DNA from: Octopus sinensis
Taxonomy: Eukaryota
Reading direction: 5' to 3'
Assembly (NCBI RefSeq): GCF_006345805.1
Contig: NC_043021.1
Span: forward strand, 15,934,001 to 15,998,000
DNA length: 64,000 nt
Part shown: piece after piece, positions 4,606 through 30,487 of the stretch
Position numbering within the stretch: the stretch's first letter is position 1
Layout of the letters: each line of letters opens with the position of its first letter
The notes under the pieces: generated by a model
Seen by the model: the letters and a program-made list of their open reading frames with translations, nothing else
Told to the model about the DNA's origin: nothing
Databases searched by the model: none
Translations under genes and position numbers: made by a program

Positions 4606-4792
4606 GTTCAGTTGAAGGAATTCGGTTTGACAGCAACTCTAAATATTTTGTCTCTATTGGAGACAGACATGTTCTTATATTCAACAACATCACTGGCTAC
4701 AGGGCTGCAATTGAAGAACTCAATGATAAACTCAACCAAACAAACTCTAACGCAGTTACAGAACGGATTAAAGAACAGATTCAAGAAGCTAA
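4606..4792 (+). CDS. TBL2: Transducin beta-like protein 2, penultimate coding exon (last WD40 blade plus C-terminal helix)
   Basis: Polypyrimidine acceptor ...ttcttccctgctag|4606 and donor 4792|gtatgt. The frame from 4608 reads SVEGIRFDSNSKYFVSIGDRHVLIFNNITGYRAAIEELNDKLNQTNSNAVTERIKEQIQEA, colinear with the human TBL2 C-terminus as I recall it (SFDITGRFLASCGDRAVRLFHNTPGHRAMVEEMQGHLKRASNESTRQRLQQQLTQA). Confidence 0.87.
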
Positions 4793-6021
4793 GTATGTAT
4801 TCCAGCCATTCTTTATATCTGGTTAAACACCACCTTCTGAGTGGTTTTTCTTCTAGTTTACATAATGGCATGTTTATCATCATTGTTTTTACATATGTTT
4901 TCCATGCTGGCATGGGTTAGAGAGAACTTTTTGAGGCAGTGTTTCACAGCCATATATCTTACCCGGTACCCATCCTTTTTGCAGAGGCATAACTAGAGTG
5001 TGTGCCACCCACAGTAGTCCTTGCATTTGCCACCATCCTCCCAGGGCCTATTCAGGTTTACCTGTAGCGCCGCCCCGACTGGCCTCGTGCCGGTGGCACG
5101 TAAAAAGCACCATCCGTTCGTGACCGTTGCCAGCCTCACCTGGCCCTTGTGCCGGTGGCACATAAAAAGCACCATCTGATCGTGGCCGTTTGCCAGACTC
5201 GTCTGGCACCTGTGCCGGTGGCACGTAAAAAGCACCCACTACACTCATGGAGTGGTTGGCATTAGGAAGGGCATCCAGCTGTAGAAACACTGCCAGATCA
5301 GACTGGGCCTGGCGCAGCCTTCTGGCTTCCCAGACCCCAGTTGAACTGTTCAGCCCATGCCAGCATGGAAAGCGGACGCTAAACGATGATGATGATGATG
5401 ATGAGAGTAGACCAAAAAGTATTGCCCTCCTCCCCATCCCATAAAAGCATTACCAAGACAGGAATGCTTTTGATCATAGTTCTGCTCAATCAGGCCTCAC
5501 TTGGATTTAAATAACAGCATTTCAGCTGTGACCATTCTCTCAGAAACTTCATTGTCTAATGCAGTAGTTCTCCACCGGAATCTATAAGAACCTTTGGGGA
5601 ATCCATATAAGATTCTGTTGTTAAAATTTATCTGCAATGAATTTGTTAATCTTCTACAATTCACAAAATATTTTAACCATTTTTTTTTTATTACAACTCC
5701 TAATAACATTTAATAATAAAAATATTATTATATGATTTTTTTTTAAACATCAAATGGCTTGGAGTTCTCCATCCAAGTAAATTAGGAATTAAAGGGCTCC
5801 ATAGATAAAATCATTTGAGAAAACATTGGTCTGATGTGTCCTTTGGCAGCTATTTCTAGCAGAATGAGTGATCATGTCGAGACTCCACTTAAATGTCTGT
5901 CGCTTTCCCTCCCCGCTTTTGTTTGCTTTGTTGTAATCTCTCATTTGTTGATCAAATAGTTGTATGATGTCTTACAAGGTGCAGGAGTGGCTGTGTGGTA
6001 AGTAGCTTGTTTACCAACCAC

Positions 6022-6507
6022 AACAAATCAAAATAGATGAACATCAATGGAATTTGTATCTTTGTGGTACCAGTGCCGGTGGCACACAAGAAAACCATCC
6101 GAACGTGGCCGTAGCCAGTACCGCATCGACTGGCCTCCGTACTGTGGGCACGTAACAAACACCATCCGATCGTGGCCGTTCGCCAGCCTCATCTGGCACC
6201 TGTGTCGGTGGCACGTAAAAACACCATCCGAGCGTGGCCGTCGGCCAGCCTCGTCTGGCACCTGTGTCGGTGGCACATTAAAAACACCATCCGAGCGTGG
6301 CCGTTCGCCAGCCTCGTCTGGCACCTGCGTCGGTGGCACATAAAATCACCCACTACACTCTCGGAGTGGTTGGCGTTAGGAAGGGCATCCAGCTGTAGAA
6401 ACACTGCCAGATCTGACTGGCCTGGTGCAGCCTTCGGGCTCCCCAGACCCCAGTTGAACCGTCCAACCCATGCTAGCATGGAAAACGGACGCTAAATGAT
6501 GATGATG
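6022..6507 (+). mobile_element. 5'-truncated RTE 3' UTR inserted into a SINE head
   Basis: Colinear with 46379-46885 (reverse strand), including the aaatcaaaatagatgaac junction. Splits the SINE consensus caaccac|atggttcc. Confidence 0.8.
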
Positions 6508-7212
6508 GTTCCAGGTTCAGTCCCACTGCGTAGCACCTTGGGCAAGTGTCTTCTGCTATAGCCCCGGGCCGACCAATGCCTTGTGAGTGGATTTGGTAGA
6601 CGGAAACTGAAAAGAAGCCCGTCGTATATATGTATATATATATATGTATGTGTGTGTGTCTGTGTTTGTCCCCCTAGCATTGCTTGACAACCAATGCTGG
6701 TGTGTTTATGTCGCCGTCACTTAGCGGTTCGGCAAAAGAGACCGATAGAATAAGTACTGGGCTTACAAAAGAATAAGTCCCGGTGTCGAATTGCTCGATT
6801 AAAAGCGGTGCTCCAGCATGGCCGCAGTCAAATGACTGAAACAAGTAAAAGAGTAAAGTGTAAGCATCAGACTTTACACTTGGTATTTTAAATCCTGCCA
6901 CAGTCAACTTGGTTTTTCCATCTTTCTCTGAAATTAATAAAACGTGTGTGTGTGTGTGTGTGTGTTGATATTGGTAGTAAATCAATATCATATACATGTT
7001 AGAAATCAATATTTGTAGAACAATAACCATGAAGTTACGGTATTGAACTATCGATTGTTGTCTCTTTTATTCTTTTAAGTCATTTAATATTATACCACGA
7101 AGCAAATACGGCCATAAATAATAGCTTGTAATATACTAGATTATAAAAAAAAACACTTGGATGGATAAGAAAGCCAAAGGCTACCTACAGTTCTTTGAGC
7201 CACATATCTTAA

Positions 7213-7724
7213 ACTAGCAGCGTTGCCCGGGTATGTAAGAGCCCCTAGTAGGTAACGACTAATACCAATCTAGTCCTTTCCCTCTAATTTCCTGCCAATT
7301 TGTGAAAGATATTGTCGAAAATATGTCATCTTGAATTTGAACACAATTTCCCAAAATGACATGATTTTATCGATTTTTTCTGATGGTAAGGTATTGCATG
7401 GAAAACTAACATCAGAATTAAGTTTCTTAGGGTAACGTTAGGTTTCACCATGAGTTTGGTGAAAATCGATTGCAAGTTGCGAAAACTACAACAGAAAATG
7501 TGTTGCATATAAAAAGCTTAGATTCTCGACCCCATGTCGAACTTATCGATTGTTTTCAGAACTGGGGGAACTTTTCAAAATTTTCGCTGTGTTAGTTTTG
7601 TATTATGACATTGGGCTATGTGTGTGTCAAGTTTCATCAGAATCGGTTGAAAGCTGTGGTCAGGGTGAGGGTACAACCTGACAGACACACAGACAGACAA
7701 ACTGCCGTTTATATAGAGAGAGAT
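7213..7724 (-). mobile_element. Non-autonomous Helitron-like element, copy 2
   Basis: Minus strand has 5' TC and 3' ...cccgggcaacgctgCTAG|t, the Helitron terminal signature. No TIRs or TSD. Confidence 0.55.
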
Positions 7725-8073
7725 GACTATAAATTTCTCAATGATTGTGGTGAAGCACAACGTTCGAACGTTGGGCCTCACGGAAGCGATGACAATTGAC
7801 CGAGACCTTTGGAGATATGCTGTGCTTGAGAAGACCCAGCAAGCCAAGTGAGACCATAATGATGGCCTATGCCAAGTGCAGCATATCTGGTCCAAATACT
7901 CTATCTGTTTTATGTCCAAACTGAGCAGATTTGGCCTCTCACACCAACCCTGCAATGTCATTCTAAAAATAAGTAATCACCTCACAATAATCTCAAAGCT
8001 ATGAGATAATGCATGATTAATTCAAAACTATGTGAATCAATAAGCATTATATTTGACAAAGTAACCTGAATGC

Positions 8074-8415
8074 CGCCGCCGTGGTGATCTCATTCTCGCT
8101 CACAACATCATAAGCGGAAAGTGTAACCTCTCGAAAGAGCTGTTCTTCACTCCTGCTCCAGAGCGTCGGCTGCGGGGTCATTCCGAAAAGCTCTACCTGT
8201 GATGATTTCATCTCAATCGAAGGAGAGGAGCTTTCTCCGTCCGGGTTGCGGATCCGTGGAACAAGCTGCCAGACGAGATGGTGAAGATGCCGACGACCGC
8301 TTTGTTCAAAGTCTCCCTTGACCTCAAGTGGCCTGAACTCTTTACATGAACACCACCCTGTACTTAACTCCATGTCCCCCTACATGGCCTTGCTATTTGC
8401 TTTTGAGCCAAAAAT

Positions 8416-8446
<31 letters not shown>
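8074..8446 (+). mobile_element. CR1-type LINE 3' end with (AACT)n tail
   Basis: Reads RRRGDLILAHNIISGKCNLSKELFFTPAPERRLRGHSEKLYL**FHLNRRRGAFSVRVADPWNKLP..., containing the CR1 motifs RRRGDLI, RGH..KL and F..RV...WN.LP. Interrupts a MITE end (gaatgc|taaagggttaa). Confidence 0.85.
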
Positions 8447-9415: not shown

Positions 9416-9452
9416 TGATGCATTGCAAGAAATTCTTCCGAAATCATCGTGA
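9416..9452 (+). CDS. TBL2: TBL2 terminal coding exon
   Basis: Strong acceptor ...gtctctgcgtcttctttcag|9416. Phase matches the upstream exon (AA|T = Asn), giving EA-N-DALQEILPKSS-stop (TGA 9450-9452), the expected remaining length for TBL2. Confidence 0.7.
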
Positions 9453-9860
9453 ATATGGAGATAGTTTGAGACTGAGTACAATGAAACATTGCTGATAAAA
9501 AAGACAAATAAAAATCAAATCAACCATTCTGTCTCAGGGAGCTGCTGATAGATCCATGTTCAACACCATTCAAATTATTTTATAACCCAACCACCCACCC
9601 ACCCTCACCACCTTGCAATTGTATTCAACTACACATTGCTGTGCAATTTTTCCAATAAAAAATAATTGATTTTCAATGTTTTTGCTTAATTCTTTTTATC
9701 TTTGTAAAAATTATGCATGTACACACACTCAATTACAAACAGTTCTCTTTAAGTTTATATTGACTGATATTTGTGTGTGTGTGTGTGTGATGACAGCAAG
9801 CAAGCTGAAACATCAAGTTTGCTGTCAACGTTCTCCTTGTAAAATTTTAATAAACATATA
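9453..9860 (+). other. TBL2 3' UTR with candidate polyadenylation signals
   Basis: AT-rich sequence after the stop codon with AATAAA at 9507, 9654 and 9849. Which signal is used is unknown. Confidence 0.45.
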
Positions 9861-9959
9861 CTCAAGTACAAAGTATTGAGGAACCCTTTAGTTTACATTA
9901 TTTTTATATATAACTTGGCATAAAAACAACAATATATATATATATATATATATAGGAAT

Positions 9960-10225
9960 AAAATTTATATATAAAGAAACAAGAACGTGAAATACACAAA
10001 GGGACGAACACAGAAAACAGACTGCTCATTCGAAACCTTTAATCTTCAGTCAGAAACCGGATCATCATAGCAAATTTCGGCTGATTAATTCTGATATTTG
10101 CTCCAACGCGGCCAGCCCCAAGAAAAAACTAAGCTATGAGCATTAGATTTCTTGGAAAAAGGAACGAATGAAAACGCAACAGGGATGAATATAAATACAA
10201 AAAACGAAAACAAAAATAAAAACAA

Positions 10226-10230
<5 letters not shown>
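9960..10230. mobile_element. Unclassified (TA)n-embedded dispersed repeat
   Basis: Homologous in reverse orientation to 13990-14230. Both copies are flanked by (TA)n. Confidence 0.55.
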
Positions 10231-10256
<26 letters not shown>

Positions 10257-10548
10257 CTAGCAGCTAAGCCCAGTTTCACCCGGTCTATTTGGATGATGTG
10301 GCTGTGATCGTTTTCGGTTAGGCATAATCTATAACAGCATTTCTCAACCTTATTATTTTGGGTCCCCTGTTTCGATTGGAGCCTCCAGCTGTATAAAAAT
10401 TTTCTGGCCCCACCTCATCAGAAAACAGCTTTTAAGCAACTGGTTGTTTTAATGGCCGAAGAAAGAGGGGAATTCCATTAGAAAAAGTTTTAATCAATTT
10501 TCTCAGTAAGTATGAGGGCTAGGCAAAAAATACAAACTGCATTCCAAT

Positions 10549-10614
10549 CTATGCACCCATCTCCACATGTGTGCCATTTTTCACAGGAATCCACCCAGCC
10601 GTTTGGCTGTGAAC
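10549..10614 (-). CDS. Candidate terminal exon of an unidentified minus-strand gene
   Basis: Minus-strand acceptor ttgtattctttcttgtcttcag, then VHSQTAGWIPVKNGTHVEMGA-stop in phase 0. No homologue recognised. Confidence 0.4.
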   Translation of the reverse strand, partial: VHSQTAGWIPVKNGTHVEMGA

Positions 10615-10887
10615 CTGAAGACAAGAAAGAATACAACAATCGCCCATGTCCAATTTATATTATATATATATATATATATATAATAGAAATATGTTACAAA
10701 AAGAAAATAGAAACTACACATGGAAAATAAGAAGAAAAATAAGCGAAAATGCACATTGGAAATCAAAAAAAGTAAAGGCTTTTTATAAAAAGTAACGATA
10801 GATGTATATACAATTAGATGAACTGAGGTAGGAATAAAAGTAATAAAAGTCATTACTGTGAATTGCTAAAGAGATTTAAAAGCATAC

Positions 10888-10959
10888 CGGTTTCGTAAAT
10901 TTACTAATCATTTCTTTGAATGCACACCGATTAATGAACAGTGTCAGGTCTACTAGTCC
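10888..10959 (-). CDS. Candidate internal exon (72 nt) of the unidentified minus-strand gene
   Basis: Acceptor aatctttttactcag and donor CCG|gtatgc. The only open frame is GLVDLTLFINRCAFKEMISKFTKP, phase 0/0, compatible with the exon at 10549-10614. Confidence 0.4.
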
Positions 10960-11208
10960 CTGAGTAAAAAGATTATATATATGGAATGTGGCAGAAGTTG
11001 TTCTCTGCACATTTTCAGTGTTTATTGCTCCTGTCTTCTTTTTATTTTCTCCTTAACCCATTTGTTACCAACCAGCCCGAGACTGCTCCTGGTTCAAGGA
11101 CACAAACATCCTGTTTCAAAGTGATTTAAATCAAAATCTTCCTTCAAAATTTCACGTTAATTTAAGTTTCAAGCAGCAACTTAATAATGACAAAATTATT
11201 TTACAACT

Positions 11209-11492
11209 ACAATTGCAGCGTGGAAGGTGTTTGTAAGCCATTTAAGAAACACACAAAAGCCGTTCGATTCACTTCAACATTTAAGTTTAATTTGTCAAAA
11301 TATTTTCGTCACTAAAATCAGTGAACATTAGCGACGAAAATACTTTGACAAATTAAACTTAAATGTTGAAGTGAATCGAACGGTTTTTGTGTGTTTCTTA
11401 AATGGCTTACAAACACCTTCCATGCTGCAATTGTTTCCGTTTCAGCACACGATCTCAGATCAAATCACTTGCTATGCAAGTACATCTCTGTA
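11209..11492. mobile_element. Foldback/MITE element (226-bp near-perfect palindrome 11209-11434)
   Basis: Long inverted arms. Terminus ...gcaagtacatctctg-TA matches the end of the related copy at 36175-36470. Confidence 0.75.
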
Positions 11493-11900
11493 ATATTTTA
11501 CAACTTCCATCAAAATTTCACGTTAATTTAAGTTTCAAGCAGCAACTTAATAACGACAAAATTATTTTACAAAATTCTTAATTATTCTAAAAATAACTGA
11601 AAGTAAGGAAGAGTATTTCTGCAGAAATACAGTAATAAAACGGTTAAGAAGGACTGTTTGAAGATATGTTGACTATTCCACTCCCCACAGCAATTTCATT
11701 GTACACTTTCTATCACTTACTCTTTCTCTCTCTCTCTCTCTCCCTCTTTCTCATTCAGTTCTGCTCTAATAACCTGTTTGCAACATGATATATTGAAACC
11801 TTGAGATGATCAGTCATTACCTCTGACACAATTGTTGTTTGTGTAAGAGATAGGACACAAACTGATGGGTCTTCTGTTTAGAAGGTTCATACCACGTTAC

Positions 11901-11923
11901 CTCAACTAACTGCAGTGATATTC
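11901..11923 (-). CDS. Candidate 23-nt exon of the unidentified minus-strand gene
   Basis: Acceptor gtaagtttgtttttag and donor GAG|gtaacg. Reads (x)ISLQLVE and ends in phase 0. Confidence 0.3.
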
Positions 11924-12466
11924 CTAAAAACAAACTTACATCACCACCAATACTGCTAATGCCATTGTCACCACCACCACCACTACTAAACAACCAGCAA
12001 TAACAATAACAAACTGCTTCATTGTTTGCTCTGCCTGACCTTCTGAATAGTGGCTATTGACTGAAAAGTGTGGAAAAAGTCGAAGGTTTTGGCCTAAGCA
12101 CCCAATAACCAGAGTGATTATGAGGCCTTAACATCTATTATCTTGAGTTTGGATTGTAGGTATAGCAGTGACATTGTTAAGAGACCAATCTTAATTGGAG
12201 CATTGTGGTTAGAAGAGGAAGGAAGAGTAGGCTATAAACTTGATAGATGATAGATAGATAGAATGACACTAAGTAATTACATATAGGCAAGCTCATGGAC
12301 AAAAAAGCAGGCATACAGAATACAGCTTGATGGGTGGATAGTTAGATTGACAAACTGAGAAATAAACAGACAGACAGATGGATAAATACTCTTTTACTTG
12401 TTTCAGTCATTTGACTGCGGCCATGCTGGAGCACCGCCTTTAATCGAGCAACTTGACCCTGGGACT

Positions 12467-12675
12467 TATGGCAGGTGGGCATTGTTTCCCATTCAAACTG
12501 CTCCAGTCTTCGGAATGTGACCCTTGCTGTATGTGGCCGAGCATTATCTTGATGGAAGAACACCTTTCTTCTTGAAAGCAAAGATGGTCATTTTTCTTCT
12601 AACACTGACTTTAGCCACTCTAGCTATTCACAGTAGATCATTGTTATCATTTGGTTTTGGGCTTAAAAGTTCAAA
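12467..12675 (-). mobile_element. Mariner transposase fragment (duplicated with the adjacent SINE junction)
   Basis: Reads ...LLSRRKVFFHQDNARPHTARVT... and has the same SINE junction as 21685-21894. Confidence 0.85.
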
Positions 12676-14239
12676 CTCTCTCTCTTTTACTCTTTTACTT
12701 GTTTCAGTCATTTGACTGCGGCCATGCTGGAGCACCGCCTTTAATCGAGCAACTCGACCCCGGGACTTATTCTTTTGCAAGCCCAGTACTTATTCTATCG
12801 GTCTCTTTTGCCGAACCGCTAAGTAACGGGGACATAAATACACCAGCATCGGTTGTCAAGCAATGCTAGGGGGACAAACACACACACGCATATATATATA
12901 TATATATATATACATATATACGACGGGCTTCTTTCAGTTTCCGTCTACCGAATCCACTCACAAGGCTTTGGTCGGCCCGAGGCTATAGTAGAAGACACTT
13001 GCCCAAGGTGCCATGCAGTGGGACTGAACCATGTGGTTGGTAAACAAGCTACTTACCACACAGCCACTCCTGCGCCTATATGGATGAATAATTTTAGATG
13101 AATAATTTTAATTATAGAGTTAATAATAGCATGTAAGATGGTTTCATCTGAATAGAGGTAAAAGAGAAACCACCTCCAGAATTCTCAGATTATCGATTAT
13201 AATGACAGACAGACAGGTACAAAGATAGAGTAACTGAACTGATTGACAGGTAAACTGTCAGCCAAATAAATTGAACAATTGATTTAATAGCATGTGTGTG
13301 TGCATATATATAATATATATGCATACATATATATGGCGGTGCCCCAGCATGGCCACAGCTTGTGAGGTGAAACTAGATAAAAAATATATATATAATATAT
13401 GCATAGATATATATATATATATATTGGTAAAAACGGTAAGATAACAAAAGAAAGAAAGAGACCTCAATATTATGTAAATAGAGGAAATTTATCTGAGTTT
13501 TATCTTGACTATTGAATAATTGTCACATATTATTTTACAGATATATATATATATATATATACATGTGCTGGTGTGTTTACATCCCCGTAACATAGAGGTT
13601 CAGCAAAAGAAACTGATAGAATAAATACTAGGCTTACAAAGAATAAGACCTAGGGGCGATCTGTGCAACTAAAGACAGTGCTCCAGCATGGCCGCAGTCA
13701 AATGACTGAAATAAATTAAAAATAAAAGAATTCTGAGAATATATATTCTTTTATTCTTTTATTTGTTTCAGTCATTTGACTACAGCCATGCTGGAGCACT
13801 GCCTTTAGTCAAACAAATCAACCTCATGACTTACTCTTTGTAAGTCTAGTATTTATTCTATCAGTCTCTTTTGCTGAACCACTAAGTTATGGGGACATAA
13901 ACACACCAACATCAGTTATCAAGCAATGGTGGGGAGGACAAACACAAACACACAATCATATACATATATATATATATATATATATTTGTATTTATATTCG
14001 TGTAACATCGTCCGTTTTTCTGTCCTTGTTTCGTATACATTCAAAGTTTTTTTACCAAGGAATCTAATGCTCTTAGCTTAGTTTTTCTTGGGGGCTGGCC
14101 AGATTGGAGCAATCTCAAGATTAATCAGCTGAAATAGTGAGGATGATCGAGTTCTTGACTGAAGATTAAAGGCTTCGAATGACCCGTCCATGTTTTTTGT
14201 ATTGTCTATCTGGATGTTTTGCATTCTTATCCCATTTTG

Positions 14240-14280
<41 letters not shown>

Positions 14281-15207
14281 GGCTTCTTTCAGTTTCCATC
14301 AATCAAGTCCACTTGCAAGGCTTTGGTCTGCCCAAGGCTATAGTAGAAGACACTTGCTCAAGATACCATACAGTGGGACTGAACCCAGATCTATGTGGTT
14401 GGGCAGCAAGCTTCTTGCCACACAGCCACGTCTATAAGTATATATATTTTTCTATTATAGGCACAAGGCCTGAAATTTTGGGGGCGAATATAGTCAATTA
14501 CATTGATCCCAGTGCTCAACTGGTACTTATTTCATCAACCCCAAAGGGAAATAAAGGCTAAGTTGACCTCAGCAGTATTTGAACTCAGAATATAAAGCTT
14601 GGAGGAAATGCTGCTAATATATCAGATGTGCAGATTAACAGAACAATGAGATTAATAATTAGGTTTTATATATTATTACCATTGTCGTTAATTCCTTTTA
14701 CAGATCTCTGTGATATTCCAGATCAGTGTTTTATCTTCAGTTTCTATAGTTTCAGCAAATTAGGTGGGAGAAAAATGGAAAAAATCTTGATCTAGATCAA
14801 ATATGTATCCATCTCTCCATCTATCATTGCTAAATCTTTCTGCAGCCATAATTGAAATCAGAACTAGAAATCAATAGTAAATTGGCAGAATTATTAGAAC
14901 TTAGAACCAAATGCATTGTAGTGTATTTTTTTCTTTTATGCTCTGTGCTCTGAATTCAATCATCTCTGCTTTTTGTCCTCTTAGGGTTGATAAAATAATG
15001 TACAAGTTTGGGGAGGTAAATTTGCTGAATAGGTACAGGTGTGGCTGTGTGGTTAAACAGCAAGCTTTACAACCATGTGGTTTCAGTTTCAATCCCATCA
15101 CACAGCACATCAGGCAAGTGCCTTCTACTATAGCCTTGGGACATTCATTGTCTGTGAGTGGATTTGGTAAGTGGAGATTGTGTAGAAGCATGTTGTATAT
15201 GTATATA

Positions 15208-18448: not shown

Positions 18449-18449
18449 T

Positions 18450-18911: not shown

Positions 18912-18942
<31 letters not shown>

Positions 18943-20688
18943 ATATATATACGATGGGCTTCTTTCAGTTTCCGTCTACCAAATCCACTCACAAGGCTTG
19001 GTCGGCCCGAGGCTATACTAGAAGACACTTGCCCAAGGTGCCACGCAGTGGGACTGAACCCAGAACCATGTGGTTGGTAATCAAGCTACTTACCACACAG
19101 CCACTCACTCCTGCGCCTATAAAGTTTTCACCTACCCTAGATTTTACTAGATGTGACTGTATGGTTAAGATGCTTGCTTAGTTCCAGTGCATGGCACTTT
19201 GGCCAAGTGTCTTCTACAAAAGCTTGCAAGTGAAGTTGATAGATGAAATGGAAAGAAGCCAATTATGCACGTGTGTGCGCACGAACATGTGTGTGTGTAT
19301 GCTTGTGTCTCCTTGTCTTCACATCACATGACTGTTGCAAATGAGTGCCAAACAATCTATTCAATTTCAATATTTCGCAGAAACCTTGCTTGGAAACAGA
19401 CGAGGGTTGGTGACGGGAACAGCATCCAGCTGTAGAAAATCTGCCTCAATAAACCTCCATAAGCTCTTTATAGTTCATGCAAGTATGGAAAAGTGAATAT
19501 TAGAACGGAGATGATAAGCATGACTGCATTTAAAAAATTTTTCATAAGGATTAGATTAAAAGAAGGACATTATGTTATCAGCAGGCAGCTACATAATTGA
19601 AGATACATAACTGATAATAAGCCAAGCGTTAAATTTATCTCTGTTTAATTAATATGAATGGCTTTGGGCAGTGATGGGAGAGTATGAGGAGAGGGCATAA
19701 ATTAACATTTGGCGAAAAAGGAAGCTGGGCTTCAAGAGGTGAAAACCCCTGCACTGTGTAGTTACAACACTTCTAGAAATAGCAGCCAAATCATCCTCAA
19801 AACCCATCTTACTATCTTTAAAAAAATGAAAGGACAGGTGGACACATTATATAATGTAGGCTTTGTTATAATATATGTTGAATGGCACCAAAAATAAAAG
19901 AAGGGATGGTCATAGCTGGAACATCTTTGATCATGAGTCTGCTCTTACAGGACCACCCTGAAGCTAAACAATAACATAAATACTACATACTACAATGACA
20001 CAGGATGAACAATCCTGAAAGCCAGATGGGATGGTCCTGGCTGGATTGACTTTGATCAGAGCTGACCTGAGACTAAGCAACAACACATAACATCTAAAAC
20101 AATAGCAAGAGCGTAAACATGATTAATGATTACACAATCACATGCAAAATTGATTAAGGATTTTAATTAATTATGTATGCATCCAATCAGGGTTGTCAGC
20201 TTATTATATCCTCATTATGTAACATCATTTATAAAGCTTTCACAAAGTTCTGATACAAAAACAATAACAAAATGTCATTGTTGGTGACCCAGTTAGTGAC
20301 CTTTTATCAGTTTCTGTGGAGTATTAACACTTTCATGTTGAATATCACAGCAAGGTAGAAAGTCTCAGGTAAACTTAGGTAAGATGGATTTGGTCCCTAA
20401 ACAGGGCCACTTCATTTTTGTCATTTATAACTTTTCAGAAAAGCATGAATGCCACCTTCCTTCCCATCCACACACTAAAGTATCTGTTGTAATTTTTGCT
20501 TATAAAAGAAAATTTAAAATATAAAAGTGCTCAGGAATCGCTGTATAGTTAAGAAGCCTGCTTTGCAAACCATGGTTCCAGGTTCAATCTTGCTACATGG
20601 TACATTATGACAGAATCTTATATTATAGCCTTGAGTTGACTAATGCCCTTGTGAGTAAAATTTTGAAGACAGAAACTGCATGGAAGCC

Positions 20689-20731
<43 letters not shown>

Positions 20732-20894
20732 TTTATATATATATATACACACACATTGCATATATATATTCATATATGTATATATATGTGTGTGTATATA
20801 TATATCATCATCATCATTTAAAGTCTGCTTTCCATGCTGGCATGGGTTGGACGATTTGACTGAGGACTAGCGATATATATATTATATATATATA

Positions 20895-20935
<41 letters not shown>

Positions 20936-21022
20936 TAAATTTTAGGGTAGCAAAAAATTCTAGAAAAATTCTCCGCTACCAGCGGTCAAGTGAGAAAGAG
21001 AAAATAGTCAATAGACTATATA

Positions 21023-21172
21023 ATATACATTCAAACATATAAGGGATGGCCATAATAGGACATCCGACTCACTAGAAAGAGCAGCCAAACTCCAAACCAC
21101 TAATAGTTGTAATTCTGGCTGCTCTTTCTAGTGAGTCGGATGTCCTATTATGGCTATCCCTTATATGTTTGA

Positions 21173-21180
<8 letters not shown>
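21023..21180. mobile_element. Foldback element, 65-bp arms with 1 mismatch and a 28-nt loop
   Basis: 21023-21087 is the reverse complement of 21116-21180. Flanked by TA repeats. Confidence 0.8.
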
Positions 21181-21205
<25 letters not shown>

Positions 21206-21393
21206 TGAGAGACAGATATTCTCCATATCGAGTACACTTCATAGTGCTCAAGAGGTTTAAACTTGAGCAGATAGAAACAGCTGTTGGACTTGTAAATCTT
21301 TTATTCCACCTCATTAACTCCTGATATCATTTCTATTCTGTATAAGTTGAACCATTTTATATGTAAACATATGTACATTTTTCGTATTAAATG

Positions 21394-22901
21394 TATTGGG
21401 TCATCCCATAAATAATGCAGTTTTTTTATACTTCTTTTATTTTTCAAAATTAAGATAAACAAATTATTTTTTAATCTAAAATATACTCTCCTTCATTTTC
21501 TACAATGCTCTTCCATCTGTCTGACAGACTCGCAAGGCCCCTCTTCCAAAATTCACTTGTCTGTGATGAAAAATACTCTTCCAGTACTGTTCTGACCTCA
21601 TCTACAATATTCATTGTTTTTCTATCCAAATGATTTTGAAGACTGTGGAATAAATGATAATCTGATGGGGCAATGTTCAGCAAATATGGCAGGTGGGCAT
21701 TGTTTCCCATTCAAATTGCTCCAGCCTTCAGAATGTGATCCTTGCTGTATGTGGCTGAGCATTATCCTGATGGAAGAACACCTTTCATCTTGAAACCAAA
21801 GACAGTCGTTTTTCTTCTAACACTGACTTTAGCCACTCTAAGCTATTCACAGTAGATCATTGTTATCATTTGGTTTTGGGCTTAAAAGTTCAAACTCTCT
21901 CTCTTTTACTCTTTTACTTGTTTCAGTCATTTGACTGCAGCCATGCTGGAGTACTGCCTTTAATCGAGCAACTCGACCCCGGGACTTATTCTTTTTGTAA
22001 GCCCAGTACTTATTCTATCGGCCTCTTTTGCCGAACCGCTAAGTAACAGAGACATAAACATACCAGCATTGGTTGTCAAGCAATGCTAGGGGGACAAACA
22101 CATACACACAAACACACACACGCATATATATATATATATATACATATATACGACGGGCTTCCTTCAGTTTTCGTCTACCAAATCCACTCACAAGGCTTTG
22201 GTCGGCCCGAGGCTATAGTAGAAGACACTTGCCCAAGATGCCACGCAGTGGGACTGAACCCGGAACCATGTGGTTGGTAAACAAGCTACTTACCACCAAC
22301 ACCTTATGTGAGTGAAGACCTTCTTTAGCCTGGGGTGCCGGTGTGTCTCCTTTTCCTACCCACTGTCTTAGCACTTGACATTTCTAGAGAGAATTCATTT
22401 TTCATCACCAGTCACTATTCAATCCAAAAATAGTTCATTCATGAGATGTGACAGTAAAGAAGAACACACATTCACTCTCTGTGCATGATTAGACTCAGAA
22501 AGTTTGTGAGGAACCCAGTGACCCAGTTTGCTGACTTTTCCAGTGTCGATGAATGGTTGAATGACCAAATCCAAGCTTCTCTGCTAGTTCCTCTATGGTT
22601 ATGATGGGATTTTGTTCCACCAGGGTTTGCAGGATGTCCTCGTTAAGCTCTACAGATCTTCCAGGATGAGGCTCGTCTTCTAGGCTGTAATTTCTGACTC
22701 AGAATTTCTGGAACCACCGTTGACACTTGCTTACACTTATTGTCCGATCCCCATATACTGCATTAATATTCCTAGCACTTTCTGTTGCAGTGTTGCCTTT
22801 ACTGAACTCTTCCAACTGTGGAAAATCTGCATCAATGAACTCCATCAAACCCAAGCTTGCTTAGCAAAGCGGATGTCAAAATGAAGATGACTGACCCAGT
22901 A
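21394..22901 (-). mobile_element. Near full-length decayed mariner interrupted by a SINE (21895-22296)
   Basis: The minus strand gives the N-terminal HTH (...SKCQRWFQKF...LEDEPHPGRSVEL), WVPHKL, IVTGDEK, then HQDNA and APSDYHLFHSL...EGEYILD*. TA-TTGGGTCA terminus at 21394 and a truncated match at 22893-22901. Confidence 0.85.
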
Positions 22902-23841
22902 TCTGATCCAAGAATAACTTCTTCCCTTCATTCACCAGTCTTGTGGACCCTGAAATAGGTCATAGGTACAGCCCTTCTCTCTGTAACTGAACCATGAATG
23001 AAAACAAACAATTGTTTTTGACTTTTTCACTTGACTTGAGACAGCATTCACCCAGGGTGGGTTGAGCTGGCTTCATTCATCCTCAATGCTGCATCTCTCA
23101 CAAATGTCAACCAAACCTGGCGATTTGAAGCTAACAGCCCTGTGATCTCCAACCACTCCCTTATTCCAGCGGTGAACGCTGTAGATATGGGGGCCTAGGT
23201 TGGGTTCCAGATCAGCCTTGACTGTCATCAGCCAGGTTTTTCATTGTCCACCACATCGCTTTCGCCAACCCTGTAGGGGAGCTGGGGCAATTGCTTCATA
23301 GATGAATTCTCCTGGCTGACAACAATTGTTTTCAGTTCAGTTTACTTAGATAACAACAGACCATTGCCTCTCTTTTAATTGTTGAATGGTTTAATACTGG
23401 GAAAAAACAGCTGCAGAATATTTGTCCCAAAACATGCCAGCGATTCAAATTTATCAAAATATCTCAACTGTGCTTGAATAGGGATGATTAAAAAAAGAAA
23501 CAAACATGCAAGAAAAAAAAGATGGGAAACTGTTGAAAAATCCCTAACAAAAATGGCTGTGTGGTAAGAAGCTTGCTTCCCAACCATTTGGTTCTGGGTT
23601 CAGTCTCACTGTATGGCACCTTGGGCAAATGTCTTCTACTATAGCCTCAGACTGACCAAAGCCTTGTCAATGGATTTGGTAGATGGAAACTGAAAGAAGC
23701 CCATCATATATTTGTGTATGTGAGTGAGTGTGCATCCATGAGTGTATGTGTGCATGTGTGTTTGTGTGCATGTGTGTGTGCAAGTGTTTATGTATGTGTT
23801 TTTGCGTATGCGTGTGTGTTTGTGAATGCATGTGTGTGTGT

Positions 23842-23884
<43 letters not shown>

Positions 23885-24799
23885 TGTGTGTGTTGTGTGT
23901 GTGTGAGTTTCCTGTCACTTAGTGTTTCAGCAGAAAAAAAAAACCCAATAGAATAAGCAACAGGCTTTAAAAAAAGTCCTCGAGTTGATTCATTTGACTA
24001 AAAATTCTTCAAGGTGGTGCCCCAGCATGGCCACAGTCTAATGATTGAAACAAGTAAAAGGTGAAAATGACCATTCCATAGAAAATTGTTGACCTTTGCA
24101 AGGGGATGAAGAAGTTATTGGCATGACTTTCTAAGAGTCCAACATGGAGGCTGTTCATAAGAATATGCATGTCTAGATTAAAGTAAAAAATGGAAAAGCA
24201 AAATGTTTGATATCACTTGGAAAGGATATTTAATTGGGATAGAGAATGTAAACACACACAGTCTCTTAGAAATGTTTCTAGGACAGCCAAGCATGTGGAT
24301 CATCATATTGAGGAAGGATTCTATAAGTTGAGTATTCCATCATCAGAGAGGGAAATGTCAGAGAGATGTAAAAAAGAGGGAAGATCATCAGTTGAGGATG
24401 TTAGTGTATTCCAGTTTGTTAAAAAAGGGGGGGAAAGGATTTTCATATATATATGTATTTCTTTACTACCCACAAGGGGCTAAACACAGAGGGGACAAAC
24501 GGGGACAGACAAATGGATTAAGTCGATTATATCGACCCCAGTACGTAACTGGTACTTAATTTATCGACCCCGAAAGGATGAAAGGCAAAGTCGAACTCGG
24601 CGGAATTTGAACTCAGAATGTAACGGCAGACGAAATACGGCTACGCATTTCGCCTGGTGTGCTAATGTTTCTACCAGCTTACCGCCTATTTTCATATATA
24701 TATATGTATATGTGTGTGCACGTGTGCATGCACGCACACACACACATACACATATAGACATATCATGGCACTGTTGTTTATGACGATGAGGGTTCTAAT

Positions 24800-24980
24800 T
24801 GATGTGTTAAAACACTTTTCTTATCAGGAATAATTTTAGATATCATTGTCCGTCTTAAACTTTACACACATGCTATCACAACCATCATTTCTCCTTTTTC
24901 ATAGCATCTTCCACAGAAAGAGCAAGGCACTTAGGACCACCGGGACTAGATTTAGCAGTAGGACCTTTGTTGGGGGACAT
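24800..24980 (-). mobile_element. Tigger/pogo-like transposase N-terminal remnant
   Basis: Reads MSPNKGPTAKSSPGGPK...LSVE...(frameshift)...SLRRTMISKIIPDKKSVL, resembling the CENP-B-type N-terminal HTH. Confidence 0.45.
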
Positions 24981-25817
24981 GGTATATGAGAAAGCATAAA
25001 TTTATATACAGTAACTGCAAACATGTATTTTGAATTTTCTGGTATGAACTACAATGTTATTTTGCTGTGGAATGCTGGAAAACTGCTTATGAAAGCTATG
25101 TAAATAAGTGTAAACATTGTAACTATTTATATCTTAAAAAATTTATTAGCTTTTATCTGTTTCAATAAATGACTTGTAAATATTTTCACATGCATTTTAT
25201 TTAACTTTCCTTCTTCAGTATTGGTGTGTAGGAATTAAAAAAAATTTGGATGCTTTTGAATATCTTTGTTGAGACTGACATAAAGTCTGCAAAATCAACT
25301 CATGTTGAAGTTTATAATTTTCTTCCTTTTATTTCTTAAAAAATAAAACAAATGAAAAAAATGATGTGAAGTTGAAAAAGGTCTAACCTACAAAACCATG
25401 TAGGTTGTGGTATGCTTGGTTTTATAATTATGTATGTGTGTGTGTTTGACCCTGTCAGTGCTGGTGCCATGTGAAAGGCAATGGTGCTGATGCCATGTGA
25501 AAGGCATGGATGCTGGTGTCAGGGGAAAAGCACTGATGCTGGTGCTATGTGAAAAGCACCCAATACACTCTGTAGAGCGGACAGTTTGACAGGTGTTGGC
25601 AAAGGCCAGGAACCACACAAGGTTCCATTGTCTGCTTTGGTAAAGTCTTTACAGGGCATCCAGCTGAAAAGACTATACCAAAGCAGACAATGGAACCCTC
25701 TGTGGTTCCTAGCTTTTCCAACACCTGTCAAACTGTCCAACTCATACCAGCATGGAAAACAGACGTTAAATGATGATGATAATGACGATGACAATGATGA
25801 TGATGATGATGATAATA

Positions 25818-26344
25818 TATCGTAAATCTTCAAGTATAATCCACATTTTTTCCCCAAAATTTAATGGTCAAAATCCCTAGTGCGTACTATAAACGAGGTT
25901 AAAAATGAAAAATATTTTCTAAGCAATGTCCGAGTCTCTATTTGCTGTCTGGCAATGTTTATTCAGATGCATTTTATGATGTTGGGCGCGAAAATACCTA
26001 AGCTAAGCCTGAAAGCAATGAAGTCATAAAAGAATCATCCATAACTTGCAGTAAGCAACATTTATTAAAATAAAAGTATTCAGAACACAGAATAACATGT
26101 AACAAAAACAATTTGCAAACATATATTCACATTCCCATATAACAGTTAAGAACATCACCATTATTATATTACGCATGTGTGGAAGTGTTTGTTCAACAAG
26201 GTGCTGCTGGCTTAATTACACATGACTCAATTTAGAGAAGGCATGCGTATTATACACAGGGTTTAGGTTTTTCAGAGGTACATCCCCCTAAAAATCTCCT
26301 GCATATTATACTGAAGGGTGGACTATACTCGAGGATTTATTGTA
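25818..26344. mobile_element. Tc2/pogo-type MITE
   Basis: Imperfect TIRs tatcgtaaatcttcaagtataatccac / gtggactatactcgaggatttattgta, with TA ends. Confidence 0.6.
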
Positions 26345-26423
26345 TTTGTTCCTACATATCTTTCACTATAGTACTTACTGATGCTTTTTAGGTCCAACTT
26401 TTCTCTCAAGGTACTTACACTCT

Positions 26424-26583
26424 AAGGCTACCATTTGTTTCATGTTAAGAAGAGTAGGAAAATATCTGAGTATCTTAACACCTCCAGGAGGCGACCAGCT
26501 TTCTCCATGTGATTGGCTTGAAAAATTTTTAAGATACTTGGATATTTTCCTACTCTTCTTAACATGAAACCAATGGTAGCCTT
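26424..26583. repeat. Inverted repeat, 55-bp arms with 3 mismatches and a 50-nt loop
   Basis: 26424-26478 pairs with 26529-26583. Confidence 0.8.
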
Positions 26584-28130
26584 GATTCACAAATAAAGAA
26601 ATTATTTATCCACCAATTCGGTGTTGAACACTCATTCCAACGTTCTACATTTACGTATATATATATATGCACACATATATACACATACACACACATATAT
26701 ATATATACATTTATATATACATATATAAACACACATATATATATATGTATATACATGTATGTATCTATGCATATATATATGTCTATATATGTACCTTGCA
26801 AGTTTACTTTGTCTCTCTCTCTCTCTCTATATATATATATACACACACACATATATGTCTAAATATATATATACACATATGTATGATGTAATAAATGGGC
26901 ATGTACACATATATACACACAATGAATATACACATGTACACACAAATACAGTATGCTTAGAAACACCGAAATATTTGTGTATAACATTTTCCGAATATGT
27001 AGTAGTACATAATAGCAATATTCCATACGTAAGTTTTAATTAAGAACAAGTAAACAATTAACAGCGAATACATGTATAGCAATTAAAATTTGCCTCTTAT
27101 CTCGTTATATTTATTGTGTATGTGTATAAATACTTATTATCTGTATAAATTATTAACTCGTACGGATAAACTGCTGTGACAACACATACGTGCATGATCA
27201 CACACAGATATTACGCACATGTGTGTTGCAATCGTCCTGGAAATATATATTAACAAATTTCATAAGAAAGCGGTAAACGTTACCAGTAAAGAGGGCGACA
27301 GAGAGAGAGGGGGTGAGAAAGAAAGAGAGAGGCAGAGAGAGAACTGTAGTTTAATATTTTTGTCAAGTTAAAGTGTTTGGGTCTTTTCTAGTCTATCCTT
27401 CTGGTTTAAGTGTTTAGATTTAGATTTTTCTTTCACCACAAAAAGTTCTCTGTCAGTCAGCAACATCTCAATTAATATAGCCATTAAAACGGACAGCTAA
27501 TTATCCCTCTTCTTCCCCGCCCCGCATATACTTATGTATATGACACGCATATATGCATACATAAATACAAAAAACACATATACGTTATGTGTATATTCAT
27601 GTATGTATAGATGCTCTTTTAACGCAGAAATAGTTTGTATTCTTTCTTCTATTTTCTCTCGCTCTCTCTCTTATTTATTTATTTATATGCCGTTGTCTAC
27701 CCGGCTGTCTATCTCATTCCCTCACTAACTTTTGTTTTCCTTCTCCGTCTCTTCTCACACATGACTTACCCTTTCTGAGTCACTCTCTGTCTCTCTTTCC
27801 CTTTCTTTCTCTATAATGTAGTTGTCCACACCTCTCTATCTCGCTTCCTTACTTTTATTTTACATATCTCCTCCATTATCGACACCCTCCCCTAATATCC
27901 TTTCACTTCTATCTATTTCTCTGTCTCTCACCCCCCCTTTTTTACTAAATTTTCTATCGTTCTCACTCTCCTTTTCATTTCACTCCGTCACTTTCGTTTT
28001 TCTCTTCCTCTTCCTCTCACACACAACTTACTATTTTTTTTTGAGGCACCCTCATTCCCTCTCACTTACATCTCTCCTATTTCTTTCTTTCTTTCTCTTT
28101 CCATCCATTACATCTATCTGTCTCGTCTCT

Positions 28131-28240
28131 CTCCCTCACATTTATCTATCTGTCTCTCCCTGTTCCCTCCCTCCCTCACATTTATCTATCTGTCTCTCCC
28201 GATCCCCTCTCTCCCTCACATCTATCTATCTGTCTCTCCC
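28131..28240. repeat. 40-bp period tandem repeat (3 copies) within a polypyrimidine tract
   Basis: Core ctccctcacat(t/c)tatctatctgtctctccc at 28131, 28171 and 28211. Confidence 0.85.
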
Positions 28241-28267
28241 TATCGCCTCCCTCCCTCTCTCTCTCAC

Positions 28268-28312
28268 TACTGGCTTCCGGCGCCTCGACTCCATCTAACA
28301 TGATGGCGGAGC
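28268..28312 (+). promoter_or_regulatory. Candidate promoter/TSS region of Mondo (ETS-like and YY1-like motifs)
   Basis: CTTCCGG at 28274-28280 and ATGGCGG at 28303-28309 in a locally CpG-containing patch, immediately after a ~480-bp polypyrimidine tract and ~390 bp before the Mondo ATG. Confidence 0.4.
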
Positions 28313-28561
28313 ACTCTCTACTCGATCCTCTCTATGACTACAAAACATTCACCGTTGAATTACAACTTTGTGCATTTTTTATAACATTGCTCGCGTGTAC
28401 CTGCCCAACCTCAATGAAATCAAGTGACATTCTAGCCAAGAATTTTGGCCGAATCTTCGCTAAATACCAATCCGTGAAGCACTTTTCATGCGTCTTTTTC
28501 ACGCTATCTTTGCTACACTGAAATATTTTGCGAAAAGGTTGTTAAACACCGAATGACTTCT

Positions 28562-28611
28562 TTCTCTTTTAACTTCTTCTCTTGCCTTTTTTTTTTTTCT
28601 TTGTTTTACAG
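28562..28611 (+). promoter_or_regulatory. Strong 3' splice site in the Mondo 5' UTR
   Basis: Branch-like ttaac, a long pyrimidine tract and ttttacag ending at 28611, 80 nt before the ATG. This implies an upstream non-coding exon. Confidence 0.55.
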
Positions 28612-28691
28612 ATGAATTATTTTGACTTAGTTTAAAACAAAGGCGGGGTGAAAATTTATTTTTTATCTTGAAGTTACGATTTTGTTATGTG

Positions 28692-29320
28692 ATGGCCATT
28701 GATGATATATTGCCGACAAAATCGAGACAGAAAATGTTAGATACTCGCCGTTTGTTCAACGCGAATATGGATACGACAGCTACGACTAGTGCTATTGGAA
28801 GTTCAGCAAGTCTTGATACTGGCAACATCAATGATAATCAAAATGCAATAGAAACCCTCTTGAAAAACAGCACCAATTTTGAATTAATCATGCCTTCAAC
28901 TTCGTCGGTGTCTGGTGCTAGAAGTGGCCATATTGCTCTTGACGCGAATGTCAACAACAATAACGACGGCACTCACAACAACAACATGATTTTCTCTGGA
29001 AACTTAAACCTAAGTAATAACTTTAACATTGATAACATGAACTTTACCTACGAGGAAACAATTCACAGTGGTCACTTTATGCTAAGTCAGGTCCACGATG
29101 ACAAAACTGCAGACGATTATGATGATGAAAATACTGTCAAAGAGGAGAAAGACGCTCAGTCCTCTTCGACGGGCCTCAATTTTCTCAGTTCTTCGACCTC
29201 CCACGAAAATGTTGGTGCTACAAATTTGGATTTTAGGGACTATAGTGCTACACAGTCAACACTTTTCTCCATTGACGGTTCTCTTACCAAACTATTCGAG
29301 TGTATGACCTTAGCTTACAG
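28692..29320 (+). CDS. MLXIP: Mondo / MLX-interacting protein (MondoA-ChREBP family), first coding exon
   Basis: First in-frame ATG (gtgATGg) after an in-frame TGA at 28623. 209 codons include EETIHSGHFMLS (Mondo conserved region I) and IDGSLTKLFECMTLAY (MCR II, nuclear export signal region). Canonical donor TACAG|gtgagt is phase 2 in the Ser codon preceding the conserved GKLxSPKW. Confidence 0.92.

Positions 29321-29778: not shown

Positions 29779-29814
<36 letters not shown>

Positions 29815-30456: not shown

Positions 30457-30487
<31 letters not shown>

What the first reader, a model, noticed from the sequence alone, without database searches (positions are those of the whole stretch)
4606..29320. 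TBL2 and Mondo are neighbours: the Williams-Beuren-region TBL2-MLXIPL linkage in a probable mollusc, with order swapped
Seen: TBL2 C-terminal exons (in a frame the ORF track missed) end ~19 kb upstream of the Mondo first coding exon, on the same strand. Established: human TBL2 and MLXIPL are adjacent and co-oriented at 7q11.23 with MLXIPL upstream, and the paralogous 12q24 block has BCL7A upstream of MLXIP. Inference: the pair is an ancient bilaterian microsynteny retained in a lineage known for extensive genome reshuffling, here as TBL2 then Mondo.
Basis: partly seen in the sequence, partly recalled or inferred. Interest (0 to 1): 0.75.

Follow-up and report, generated by a model that had tools for sequence, protein, structure and literature searches.

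The report
Octopus TBL2 and Mondo genes adjacent
The window is Octopus sinensis DNA in which the end of the TBL2 gene lies 19 kb upstream of the start of the sugar-sensing Mondo/ChREBP gene, but that side-by-side arrangement was found only in octopods and an amniote, so what is ancient is same-chromosome linkage, not the neighbour pair.

Summary
Window 4606-4792 plus 9416-9452 encode the last 74 residues of Octopus sinensis TBL2 (100% identity, splice 4792>9416 as annotated). Window 28692-29320 is the first coding exon of Mondo/ChREBP-like, with Mondo conserved regions I and II. Both are on the + strand, 19.2 kb apart, with only repeats and transposon debris between them. The window is 100% identical over its first 19,452 bases to GCA_006345805.1 CM016883.1.

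The same order (TBL2 then Mondo) occurs in Argonauta hians, and adjacent accessions suggest it in O. bimaculoides. Alligator has MLXIPL>TBL2>BCL7, like human. Mondo is not TBL2's neighbour in Lineus, Owenia or Takifugu, nor its downstream neighbour in Ptychodera. No Mondo lies within 10 kb of TBL2 in scallop, oyster or sea urchin. The two genes share a chromosome but sit tens to hundreds of genes apart in Sinanodonta, Patella, Owenia, Antedon and Glandiceps.

Owenia and Ptychodera share a different 3' neighbour of TBL2, a Rabaptin/FYVE gene. The best reading is ancient chromosome-scale linkage, with adjacency arising separately in octopods and in the lineage leading to amniotes. The finding is ordinary and of low interest.

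The parts
4606..4792 (+). TBL2 penultimate coding exon (residues ~375-437: last WD40 blade fragment plus start of the C-terminal helix)
   Evidence: Sequence, translation. 100% identical to P0001 O. sinensis TBL2. 77% identical to Argonauta TBL2.
9416..9452 (+). TBL2 last coding exon (..NDALQEILPKSS) with stop TGA at 9450-9452
   Evidence: The splice 4792>9416 reproduces the annotated C-terminus exactly.
9507..9659 (+). Candidate TBL2 polyadenylation signals (AATAAA/ATTAAA hexamers starting at 9507 and 9654)
   Evidence: Motif scan. Inference only; no transcript data.
9453..28691 (.). Gap from the TBL2 stop to the Mondo ATG (19.2 kb), with no recognisable host gene. It holds SINE copies, mariner/Tc1-like transposase remnants, a LINE tail, a minisatellite and a microsatellite.
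   Evidence: Six-frame ORFs. Pfam on the longest ORFs found only a weak HTH match. No Rfam family or tRNA. No gene called in the first 10 kb in the NCBI record. Against Argonauta only dispersed repeat copies and one 79-bp stretch overlapping a tandem repeat align.
15790..17131 (.). 90-bp minisatellite, 14.9 copies, 95% matches, with 359/449-bp higher-order periods
17460..18403 (.). Long C/A-only microsatellite, (ACC)n-like with a 15-bp period, GC skew -1
27001..33000 (.). CpG-non-depleted block (o/e 0.85-1.30 against a window median of 0.39) surrounding the Mondo first coding exon. Probably Mondo's own promoter region.
   Evidence: The promoter function is inferred.
28692..29320 (+). Mondo (MLXIP/MLXIPL, ChREBP-like) first coding exon. 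It has an octopod-specific Asn/Ser/Thr-rich N-terminal extension, then MCR I (IHSGHFM) and MCR II (SLTKLFECMTLAY). Donor AG|GTGAGT.
   Evidence: A polypyrimidine tract plus 'acag' about 80 bp upstream of the ATG suggests an upstream non-coding exon (inference).
29321..64000 (+). Mondo intron 1, more than 34.7 kb and running off the window. It is full of repeats, including a non-LTR retrotransposon reverse transcriptase ORF at 47649-48851 (-).
   Evidence: No exon 2 motif (SPKWK.FKG, NNxIWR) and no tblastn hit downstream. RVT_1 E=9e-32.

Best explanation
Two unrelated, independently transcribed genes lie head-to-tail on Octopus sinensis chromosome CM016883.1. The first is the 3' end of TBL2, an ER-associated WD40 protein. 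The second is the 5' end of the single invertebrate Mondo gene, a glucose-sensing bHLH-Zip partner of Mlx. The adjacency is an octopod-level feature, directly seen in O. sinensis and Argonauta and indicated by accession order in O. bimaculoides. It sits on top of a much older and looser linkage: TBL2 and Mondo belong to the same ancestral bilaterian chromosome and stay on one chromosome in many phyla, usually tens to hundreds of genes apart. Rearrangement within that linkage group brought them side by side in the octopod (or coleoid) lineage as TBL2>Mondo. Separately, it brought them together in the lineage leading to amniotes as Mondo>TBL2>BCL7. No shared regulatory mechanism is needed. Mondo appears to have its own CpG-rich promoter region, and the gap between the genes is repeat debris.
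For: Shown:
- Gene identities and splice sites.
- The window is CM016883.1 of GCA_006345805.1 (100% over 19,452 bases).
- Argonauta hians has TBL2(+), a 7.6-kb gap, then the 1350-aa HLH Mondo(+).
- O. bimaculoides accessions are 7 apart: XP_014786229 and XP_014786236.
- Alligator has HLH(Mondo C-terminus)>TBL2>BCL_N.
- Non-adjacency: Lineus has EGF|TBL2|AIP-FKBP. Owenia has BRCT-Ank|TBL2|Rabaptin-FYVE. Ptychodera has TBL2|Rabaptin-FYVE. Takifugu has POM121|TBL2|MYBBP1A.
- No Mondo sequence lies within 10 kb of TBL2 in scallop, oyster or sea urchin.
- Same chromosome but apart: Sinanodonta locus tags 012925 and 012963. Patella 004117 and 003743. Owenia CAH1801363 and CAH1802620. Antedon XP_071944671 and XP_071944919. 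Glandiceps XP_077995758 and XP_077995978.
- Owenia (annelid) and Ptychodera (hemichordate) share the same convergent 3' neighbour of TBL2. Its FYVE exon is 62% identical between them. That neighbour is a better candidate for the ancestral one.
- No conserved non-coding element between Octopus and Argonauta in the gap.
- A CpG o/e peak around the Mondo exon.

Inferred: independent origin of the two adjacencies, argued from parsimony and from the different gene order.
Against: - Losing an adjacency is far easier than gaining a specific one. Two retentions with many losses cannot be excluded.
- Neighbour checks were limited to 10 kb of flank, so scallop, oyster, sea urchin and the upstream side of Ptychodera are uninformative beyond that.
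- Distances from locus tags and accession numbers are only proxies for gene order.
- No squid, cuttlefish, Nautilus, amphioxus, brachiopod or cnidarian locus could be examined.
- In Sinanodonta the genes are only 38 locus tags apart, closer than random placement on a 130-Mb chromosome would usually give.
Confidence: 0.68

Rival explanations
1. TBL2-Mondo was already an adjacent pair in the bilaterian ancestor. It was kept in octopods and amniotes, with a local swap of order, and broken independently in every other lineage sampled.
For: Adjacency with co-orientation occurs in two very distant lineages. The genes lie on the same chromosome in every chromosome-scale genome where both could be placed. 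They are only 38 locus tags apart in Sinanodonta. For a single pre-specified pair, the chance of adjacency given random order on one chromosome is small, roughly 2/n genes (my estimate).
Against: It needs at least five independent losses: teleost, Ambulacraria, annelid, nemertean and gastropod/bivalve. It also needs an order swap. Two gains need neither. Slow-evolving Owenia has them about 1,250 protein accessions apart. Owenia also shares a different TBL2 3' neighbour with Ptychodera. The pair meets the published four-lineage criterion in only two lineages. The pair was noticed post hoc. Among thousands of octopus neighbour pairs drawn from shared linkage groups, on the order of ten chance coincidences with human are expected (my rough estimate, not computed from data).
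Confidence: 0.2
2. The adjacency is functionally constrained. It would be either a coleoid-specific regulatory block, with Mondo enhancers inside or next to TBL2, or a convergently favoured pairing of two genes tied to lipid and ER-stress metabolism.
For: The pair is kept between Octopus and Argonauta despite heavy repeat turnover in the gap. Cephalopods are reported to have many lineage-specific microsyntenies linked to regulation (PMC9023564). In humans both genes sit in one triglyceride-associated locus (PMC3818985).
Against: No conserved non-coding sequence was found between Octopus and Argonauta in the gap or in the last TBL2 intron, only dispersed repeat (SINE-like) copies. Neither gene name appears in the supplementary text held for PMC9023564. 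Conservation within Octopoda alone is expected from shared ancestry without any selection. Mondo has its own CpG-rich 5' region.
Confidence: 0.1

Closest known systems
Amniote Williams-Beuren-region block MLXIPL-TBL2-BCL7B (human 7q11.23; alligator locus L011)
   Same: The same two orthologous genes are immediate neighbours, co-oriented, with about 6.5 kb between them in alligator and 19 kb here. The human order is from established knowledge. The 'MLXIPL/TBL2 locus' appears in PMC3818985.
   Different: The order is reversed: TBL2 lies upstream of Mondo here and downstream in amniotes. No BCL7 homologue is present in the window or in the octopod loci fetched. The upstream neighbour in Argonauta is a TYW1-like gene. 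A teleost lacks the adjacency.
Conserved ancestral microsyntenic pairs (CAMPs; Irimia et al. 2012, PMC3514665)
   Same: A pair of unrelated genes found as neighbours in distant animal phyla.
   Different: [quoted passage not shown] This pair was found adjacent in only two, octopod molluscs and amniotes. It was absent in the annelid, nemertean, echinoderm, hemichordate, gastropod and bivalve species sampled.
Bilaterian ancestral linkage groups (chromosome-scale macrosynteny; Simakov et al. 2022, PMC8809688)
   Same: TBL2 and Mondo lie on one chromosome or contig in Owenia, Patella, Sinanodonta, Antedon and Glandiceps, as well as in octopods, alligator and Denticeps. This is the expected pattern for two genes of one linkage group whose order has been scrambled.
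   Different: The linkage-group assignment itself could not be looked up, because no supplement is held.
Cephalopod-specific microsyntenies (Schmidbaur et al. 2022, PMC9023564)
   Same: A neighbour pair shared among cephalopods but not with other molluscs, in a lineage with a reorganised genome.
   Different: It was shown here only for Octopoda. Neither gene name appears in that paper's supplementary text held here. There is no evidence of shared regulation.

Membership tests
TBL2 (transducin beta-like protein 2) orthologue group | Sequence orthology to TBL2 rather than to another WD40 protein | tested here: met
   The window peptide is 100% identical to the C-terminus of O. sinensis TBL2 P0001. 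Among the 120 best hits of full-length P0001, every protein that carries a descriptive name is called TBL2. These span molluscs, annelids, echinoderms, hemichordates and vertebrates, with E from 1e-230 to 1e-120.
TBL2 (transducin beta-like protein 2) orthologue group | N-terminal hydrophobic anchor plus WD40 beta-propeller | not testable with these tools
   Those exons lie upstream of the window. They are present in P0001 (VLATIVMMVVFFFFV; WD40 Pfam hits). Pfam on the 61-aa window fragment alone is not significant.
Mondo family (MLXIP/MondoA, MLXIPL/ChREBP) | N-terminal Mondo conserved regions I and II of the glucose-sensing module | tested here: met
   IHSGHFM and SLTKLFECMTLAY are present. 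They align to Mondo proteins of Argonauta, Bulinus, Patella and Zerene and to two unnamed sequences from Logan assemblies (P0006, P0008).
Mondo family (MLXIP/MondoA, MLXIPL/ChREBP) | MCR III-V, the bHLH-Zip domain and the C-terminal dimerisation/cytoplasmic-localisation domain | not testable with these tools
   These are outside the window. They are present in the 95%-identical O. bimaculoides orthologue P0003 (PF00010...NWKFWIF...).
Conserved ancestral microsyntenic pair (Irimia et al. 2012) | [quoted passage not shown] | tested here: not met
   Adjacent only in octopods and alligator. Not adjacent in Lineus, Owenia, Ptychodera (3' side), Takifugu, Sinanodonta, Patella, Antedon and Glandiceps. 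Scallop, oyster and sea urchin were inconclusive beyond 10 kb.
Chromosome-scale conserved linkage (same ancestral linkage group) | Both orthologues on the same chromosome in several phyla | tested here: met
The genes are on different scaffolds in Bulinus and in the fragmented Limulus assembly.

The most novel reading that the evidence does not exclude
The TBL2-Mondo neighbour pair is a true bilaterian-ancestral microsynteny that survived about 600 million years in octopods and amniotes. Alternatively, it is an adjacency that selection has re-created twice because the two genes share regulation in nutrient and ER-stress physiology. Either way, part of the human Williams-Beuren/triglyceride locus architecture would be functionally constrained.
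Probability: 0.15. Interest if true: 0.5.

Novelty: new member of a known kind. Interest (0 to 1): 0.2.

Why it matters
If the pair were an ancestral microsynteny, it would suggest a regulatory tie between a glucose-sensing transcription factor and its WD40 neighbour inside a human disease and GWAS locus. The evidence instead fits the usual picture: deep chromosome-scale linkage with scrambled local order, and neighbour pairs that form and break within lineages. The practical value is modest. The case also shows that two-lineage adjacency is not enough to call ancient microsynteny. The TBL2/Rabaptin-FYVE pair shared by an annelid and a hemichordate is a better candidate for TBL2's ancestral neighbour.

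Tried and rejected
- Pfam scans of the two exon peptides gave nothing significant. The fragments are too short and Pfam returned no Mondo-specific family.
- Homology searches needed X-padding of the query to get past the length filter.
- A search for Mondo exon 2 motifs and a tblastn with five Mondo proteins found no further exon in the window.
- The shark TBL2 locus was uninformative, because one giant syntaxin/SSF gene model covers it.
- Denticeps TBL2 was not on record for a locus look-up.
- The Octopus-Argonauta blastn for conserved non-coding elements returned, apart from the exons and one short stretch over a tandem repeat, only dispersed repeat (SINE-like) copies.
- No BCL7 homologue was found in the window or the octopod loci.
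- Rfam and tRNA scans of the window were empty.
- Literature: no paper links TBL2 or MLXIPL with microsynteny. The vertebrate Mlxip/Mlxipl evolution paper does not discuss neighbours. Supplements of PMC9023564 and PMC8851819 contain neither gene name. Supplements of PMC8809688 and PMC3514665 are not held.
- I considered and rejected a gene hidden between TBL2 and Mondo. The ORFs there are repeat-derived or low-complexity.
Full report
**What is in the window**

The sequence is AT-rich, repeat-laden animal DNA. The exon at 4606-4792 is preceded by a polypyrimidine tract and AG, and it ends AA|GTATGT. The exon at 9416-9452 follows tttcAG and ends in TGA. Translated and joined, they give SVEGIRFDSNSKYFVSIGDRHVLIFNNITGYRAAIEELNDKLNQTNSNAVTERIKEQIQEA-NDALQEILPKSS.

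A database search with this peptide, X-padded to pass the length filter, returned 'transducin beta-like protein 2 [Octopus sinensis]' (P0001, 448 aa) at 100% identity. It also returned the Argonauta hians orthologue at 77%. tblastn finds no other TBL2 exon in the window.

With full-length P0001 as query, every descriptively named protein among the 120 best hits is called TBL2. These come from molluscs, annelids, nemerteans, echinoderms, hemichordates, chelicerates and vertebrates, with E from 1e-230 to 1e-120. The worry that 'a different WD40 protein' might be the best hit does not apply.

**Mondo**

The open frame from ATG 28692 to the donor AG|GTGAGT at 29320/29321 is 95% identical to residues 1-210 of O. 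bimaculoides ChREBP-like XP_014786236.1 (P0003, 1234 aa, HLH domain). It is 54% identical to the Argonauta orthologue. It aligns through IHSGHFM and SLTKLFECMTLAY, the Mondo conserved regions I and II, to Mondo proteins of gastropods and a butterfly.

Octopods carry an extra Asn/Ser/Thr-rich stretch of roughly 50-115 residues ahead of MCR I. The next exon (SGKIVSPKWKPFKG...) is not in the window, so intron 1 is longer than 34.7 kb.

**Origin of the window**

Window bases 1-19452 are 100% identical to GCA_006345805.1 CM016883.1 (O. sinensis, a 28.9-Mb chromosome). This places the window at about 15,934,001-15,998,000 of that record.

**The gap between the genes**

From the TBL2 stop to the Mondo ATG is 19,239 bp. 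The gap holds these features:
- a 90-bp minisatellite (15790-17131);
- a roughly 940-bp C/A-only microsatellite (17460-18403);
- SINE copies, transposase remnants and a LINE tail.

The longest ORFs hit no host gene family in Pfam. There is no Rfam family or tRNA. NCBI calls no gene in the first 10 kb.

CpG observed/expected is 0.85-1.30 from 27 to 33 kb, against a window median of 0.39. I read this as Mondo's own promoter-type region (inference). A pyrimidine tract plus 'acag' about 80 bp upstream of the ATG hints at an upstream non-coding exon (inference).

**Is the adjacency old? Neighbour-scale evidence**

TBL2 loci were fetched with 10-kb flanks from a range of animals.

| Species | Arrangement around TBL2 |
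|---|---|
| Argonauta hians | TYW1-like(-) \| TBL2(+) \| 7.6 kb \| 1350-aa HLH protein(+), which is its Mondo |
| Alligator | Mondo C-terminal exons (HLH, 895 aa)(+) \| TBL2(+) \| BCL7(+) |
| Lineus (nemertean) | EGF protein \| TBL2 \| AIP/FKBP |
| Owenia (annelid) | BRCT-Ank \| TBL2 \| Rabaptin/Rab5-bind/FYVE(-) |
| Ptychodera (hemichordate) | TBL2 \| Rabaptin/Rab5-bind/FYVE(-) |
| Takifugu | POM121 \| TBL2 \| MYBBP1A |
| Scallop | POLD4 upstream, nothing downstream within 10 kb |
| Oyster | TMEM17 upstream, nothing downstream within 10 kb |
| Sea urchin | nothing within 10 kb on either side |

Argonauta has the same order and orientation as the window. In O. bimaculoides the TBL2 and ChREBP-like accessions are seven apart.

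tblastn with five Mondo proteins against all fetched loci hits only the window and Argonauta. The FYVE exons of the Owenia and Ptychodera neighbours are 62% identical. A protostome and a deuterostome therefore share a different convergent 3' neighbour of TBL2.

**Chromosome-scale evidence**

A full phmmer search with Bulinus Mondo, followed by cluster look-ups, was matched to the TBL2 list. Matching used contig length together with locus tags or accessions.

| Species | Shared contig (bp) | TBL2 vs Mondo identifiers |
|---|---|---|
| Sinanodonta | 130,511,731 | locus tags 012925 / 012963 |
| Patella | 79,713,015 | locus tags 004117 / 003743 |
| Owenia | 36,706,527 | CAH1801363 / CAH1802620 |
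| Antedon | 38,962,182 | XP_071944671 / XP_071944919 |
| Glandiceps | 23,477,501 | XP_077995758 / XP_077995978 |
| Denticeps | 25,515,720 | positions not compared |

Bulinus and Limulus place the two genes on different scaffolds. In short, the two genes are syntenic in the old sense almost everywhere, but they are neighbours only in octopods and alligator among the loci examined (human from established knowledge).

**Interpretation**

[quoted passage not shown] This pair qualifies in two.

Ancestral adjacency would need at least five independent losses and an order swap. Two independent gains within one linkage group are more parsimonious, and they agree with the shared Owenia/Ptychodera neighbour.

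The pair was also noticed after the fact. Among thousands of octopus neighbour pairs whose members share a linkage group, I would expect a handful to coincide with human neighbours by chance. That is a rough estimate, not a computation.

I put about 0.65-0.7 on derived octopod adjacency over ancient loose linkage. I put about 0.2 on true ancestral adjacency and about 0.1 on a functionally constrained or convergent block. No conserved non-coding sequence between Octopus and Argonauta supports the last option.

**Limits**

- Flanks were capped at 10 kb.
- Accession and locus-tag gaps are only proxies for gene order.
- No squid, Nautilus, amphioxus, brachiopod or cnidarian locus was available.

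**Verdict**

Both genes are correctly named and already annotated in RefSeq. The evolutionary inference should be downgraded from 'retained ancient microsynteny' to 'ancient chromosome-scale linkage with lineage-specific adjacency'. Interest is low.

Noticed in passing
L008 21875-25707 (Owenia) and L004 26871-31286 (Ptychodera): In an annelid and a hemichordate, TBL2 has the same tail-to-tail 3' neighbour. It is a Rabaptin/Rab5-bind/FYVE protein, and its FYVE exon is 62% identical between the two. This is a candidate genuinely ancestral TBL2 microsynteny. In Takifugu, TBL2 instead abuts MYBBP1A. From memory, the human MYBBP1A orthologue lies near RABEP1 on 17p13.
   Followed up: partly
L001 1-3022 (Argonauta hians): The upstream, divergently oriented neighbour of TBL2 is a TYW1-like gene (Flavodoxin_1, Radical_SAM and Wyosine_form domains). 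From memory, human TYW1 and TYW1B also lie on 7q11.2, which fits one shared linkage group. No gene is called within 10 kb upstream of TBL2 in O. sinensis (L012).
   Followed up: no
window 15790-17131: A 90-bp minisatellite with 14.9 copies at 95% identity and higher-order periods of 359 and 449 bp. One strand gives a long repeat-encoded open frame (16128-16676, -) that is not a gene.
   Followed up: partly
window 17460-18403: About 940 bp of sequence made almost only of C and A ((ACC)n-like, 15-bp period). GC skew is -1.0 and there is a single CpG in the kilobase.
   Followed up: no
window 47012-48851 (-): A non-LTR retrotransposon in Mondo intron 1. It has a 400-aa open frame with a reverse transcriptase domain (RVT_1, E=9e-32) and a C-terminal zinc-finger-like motif. 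Two further contiguous open frames follow (47263-47652 and 47012-47272). It is possibly a young element.
   Followed up: partly
window 1058-1152, 4134-4242, 6497-6622, 12923-13017, 18954-19047, 22153-22247, 23610-23704, 32035-32100, 61309-61422 and others: A roughly 95-bp repeat core is scattered through the window. It is 80-90% identical to several copies in the Argonauta TBL2 locus. A second family of roughly 150 bp (for example 2153-2312, 6360-6507, 46379-46543) behaves the same way. These are probably old octopod SINE families.
   Followed up: no
window 28692-29090: Octopus Mondo has a low-complexity N-terminal extension (Asn/Ser/Thr-rich) before MCR I. IHSGHFM starts near residue 123, against roughly residue 13-30 in the gastropod and butterfly Mondo proteins compared here. 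The extension is about 50 residues shorter in Argonauta.
   Followed up: partly
window 27001-33000: A 6-kb block where CpG is not depleted (o/e 0.85-1.30 against a median of 0.39). It spans the Mondo first coding exon and the start of intron 1. Intron 1 is longer than 34.7 kb and could hold alternative promoters, as in mammalian ChREBP alpha/beta (speculation).
   Followed up: partly
window 33031-33768 (+), 12345-12587 (-), 21474-21816 (-), 22498-22698 (-), 15446-15694 (+): Decayed mariner/Tc1-like DNA transposon remnants, with frames such as ...FHQDNARPHTA... and ...APSDYHLFHSLQNHL.... These motifs are recognised from memory. Only the 22498-22698 fragment gave weak HTH hits in Pfam.
   Followed up: partly
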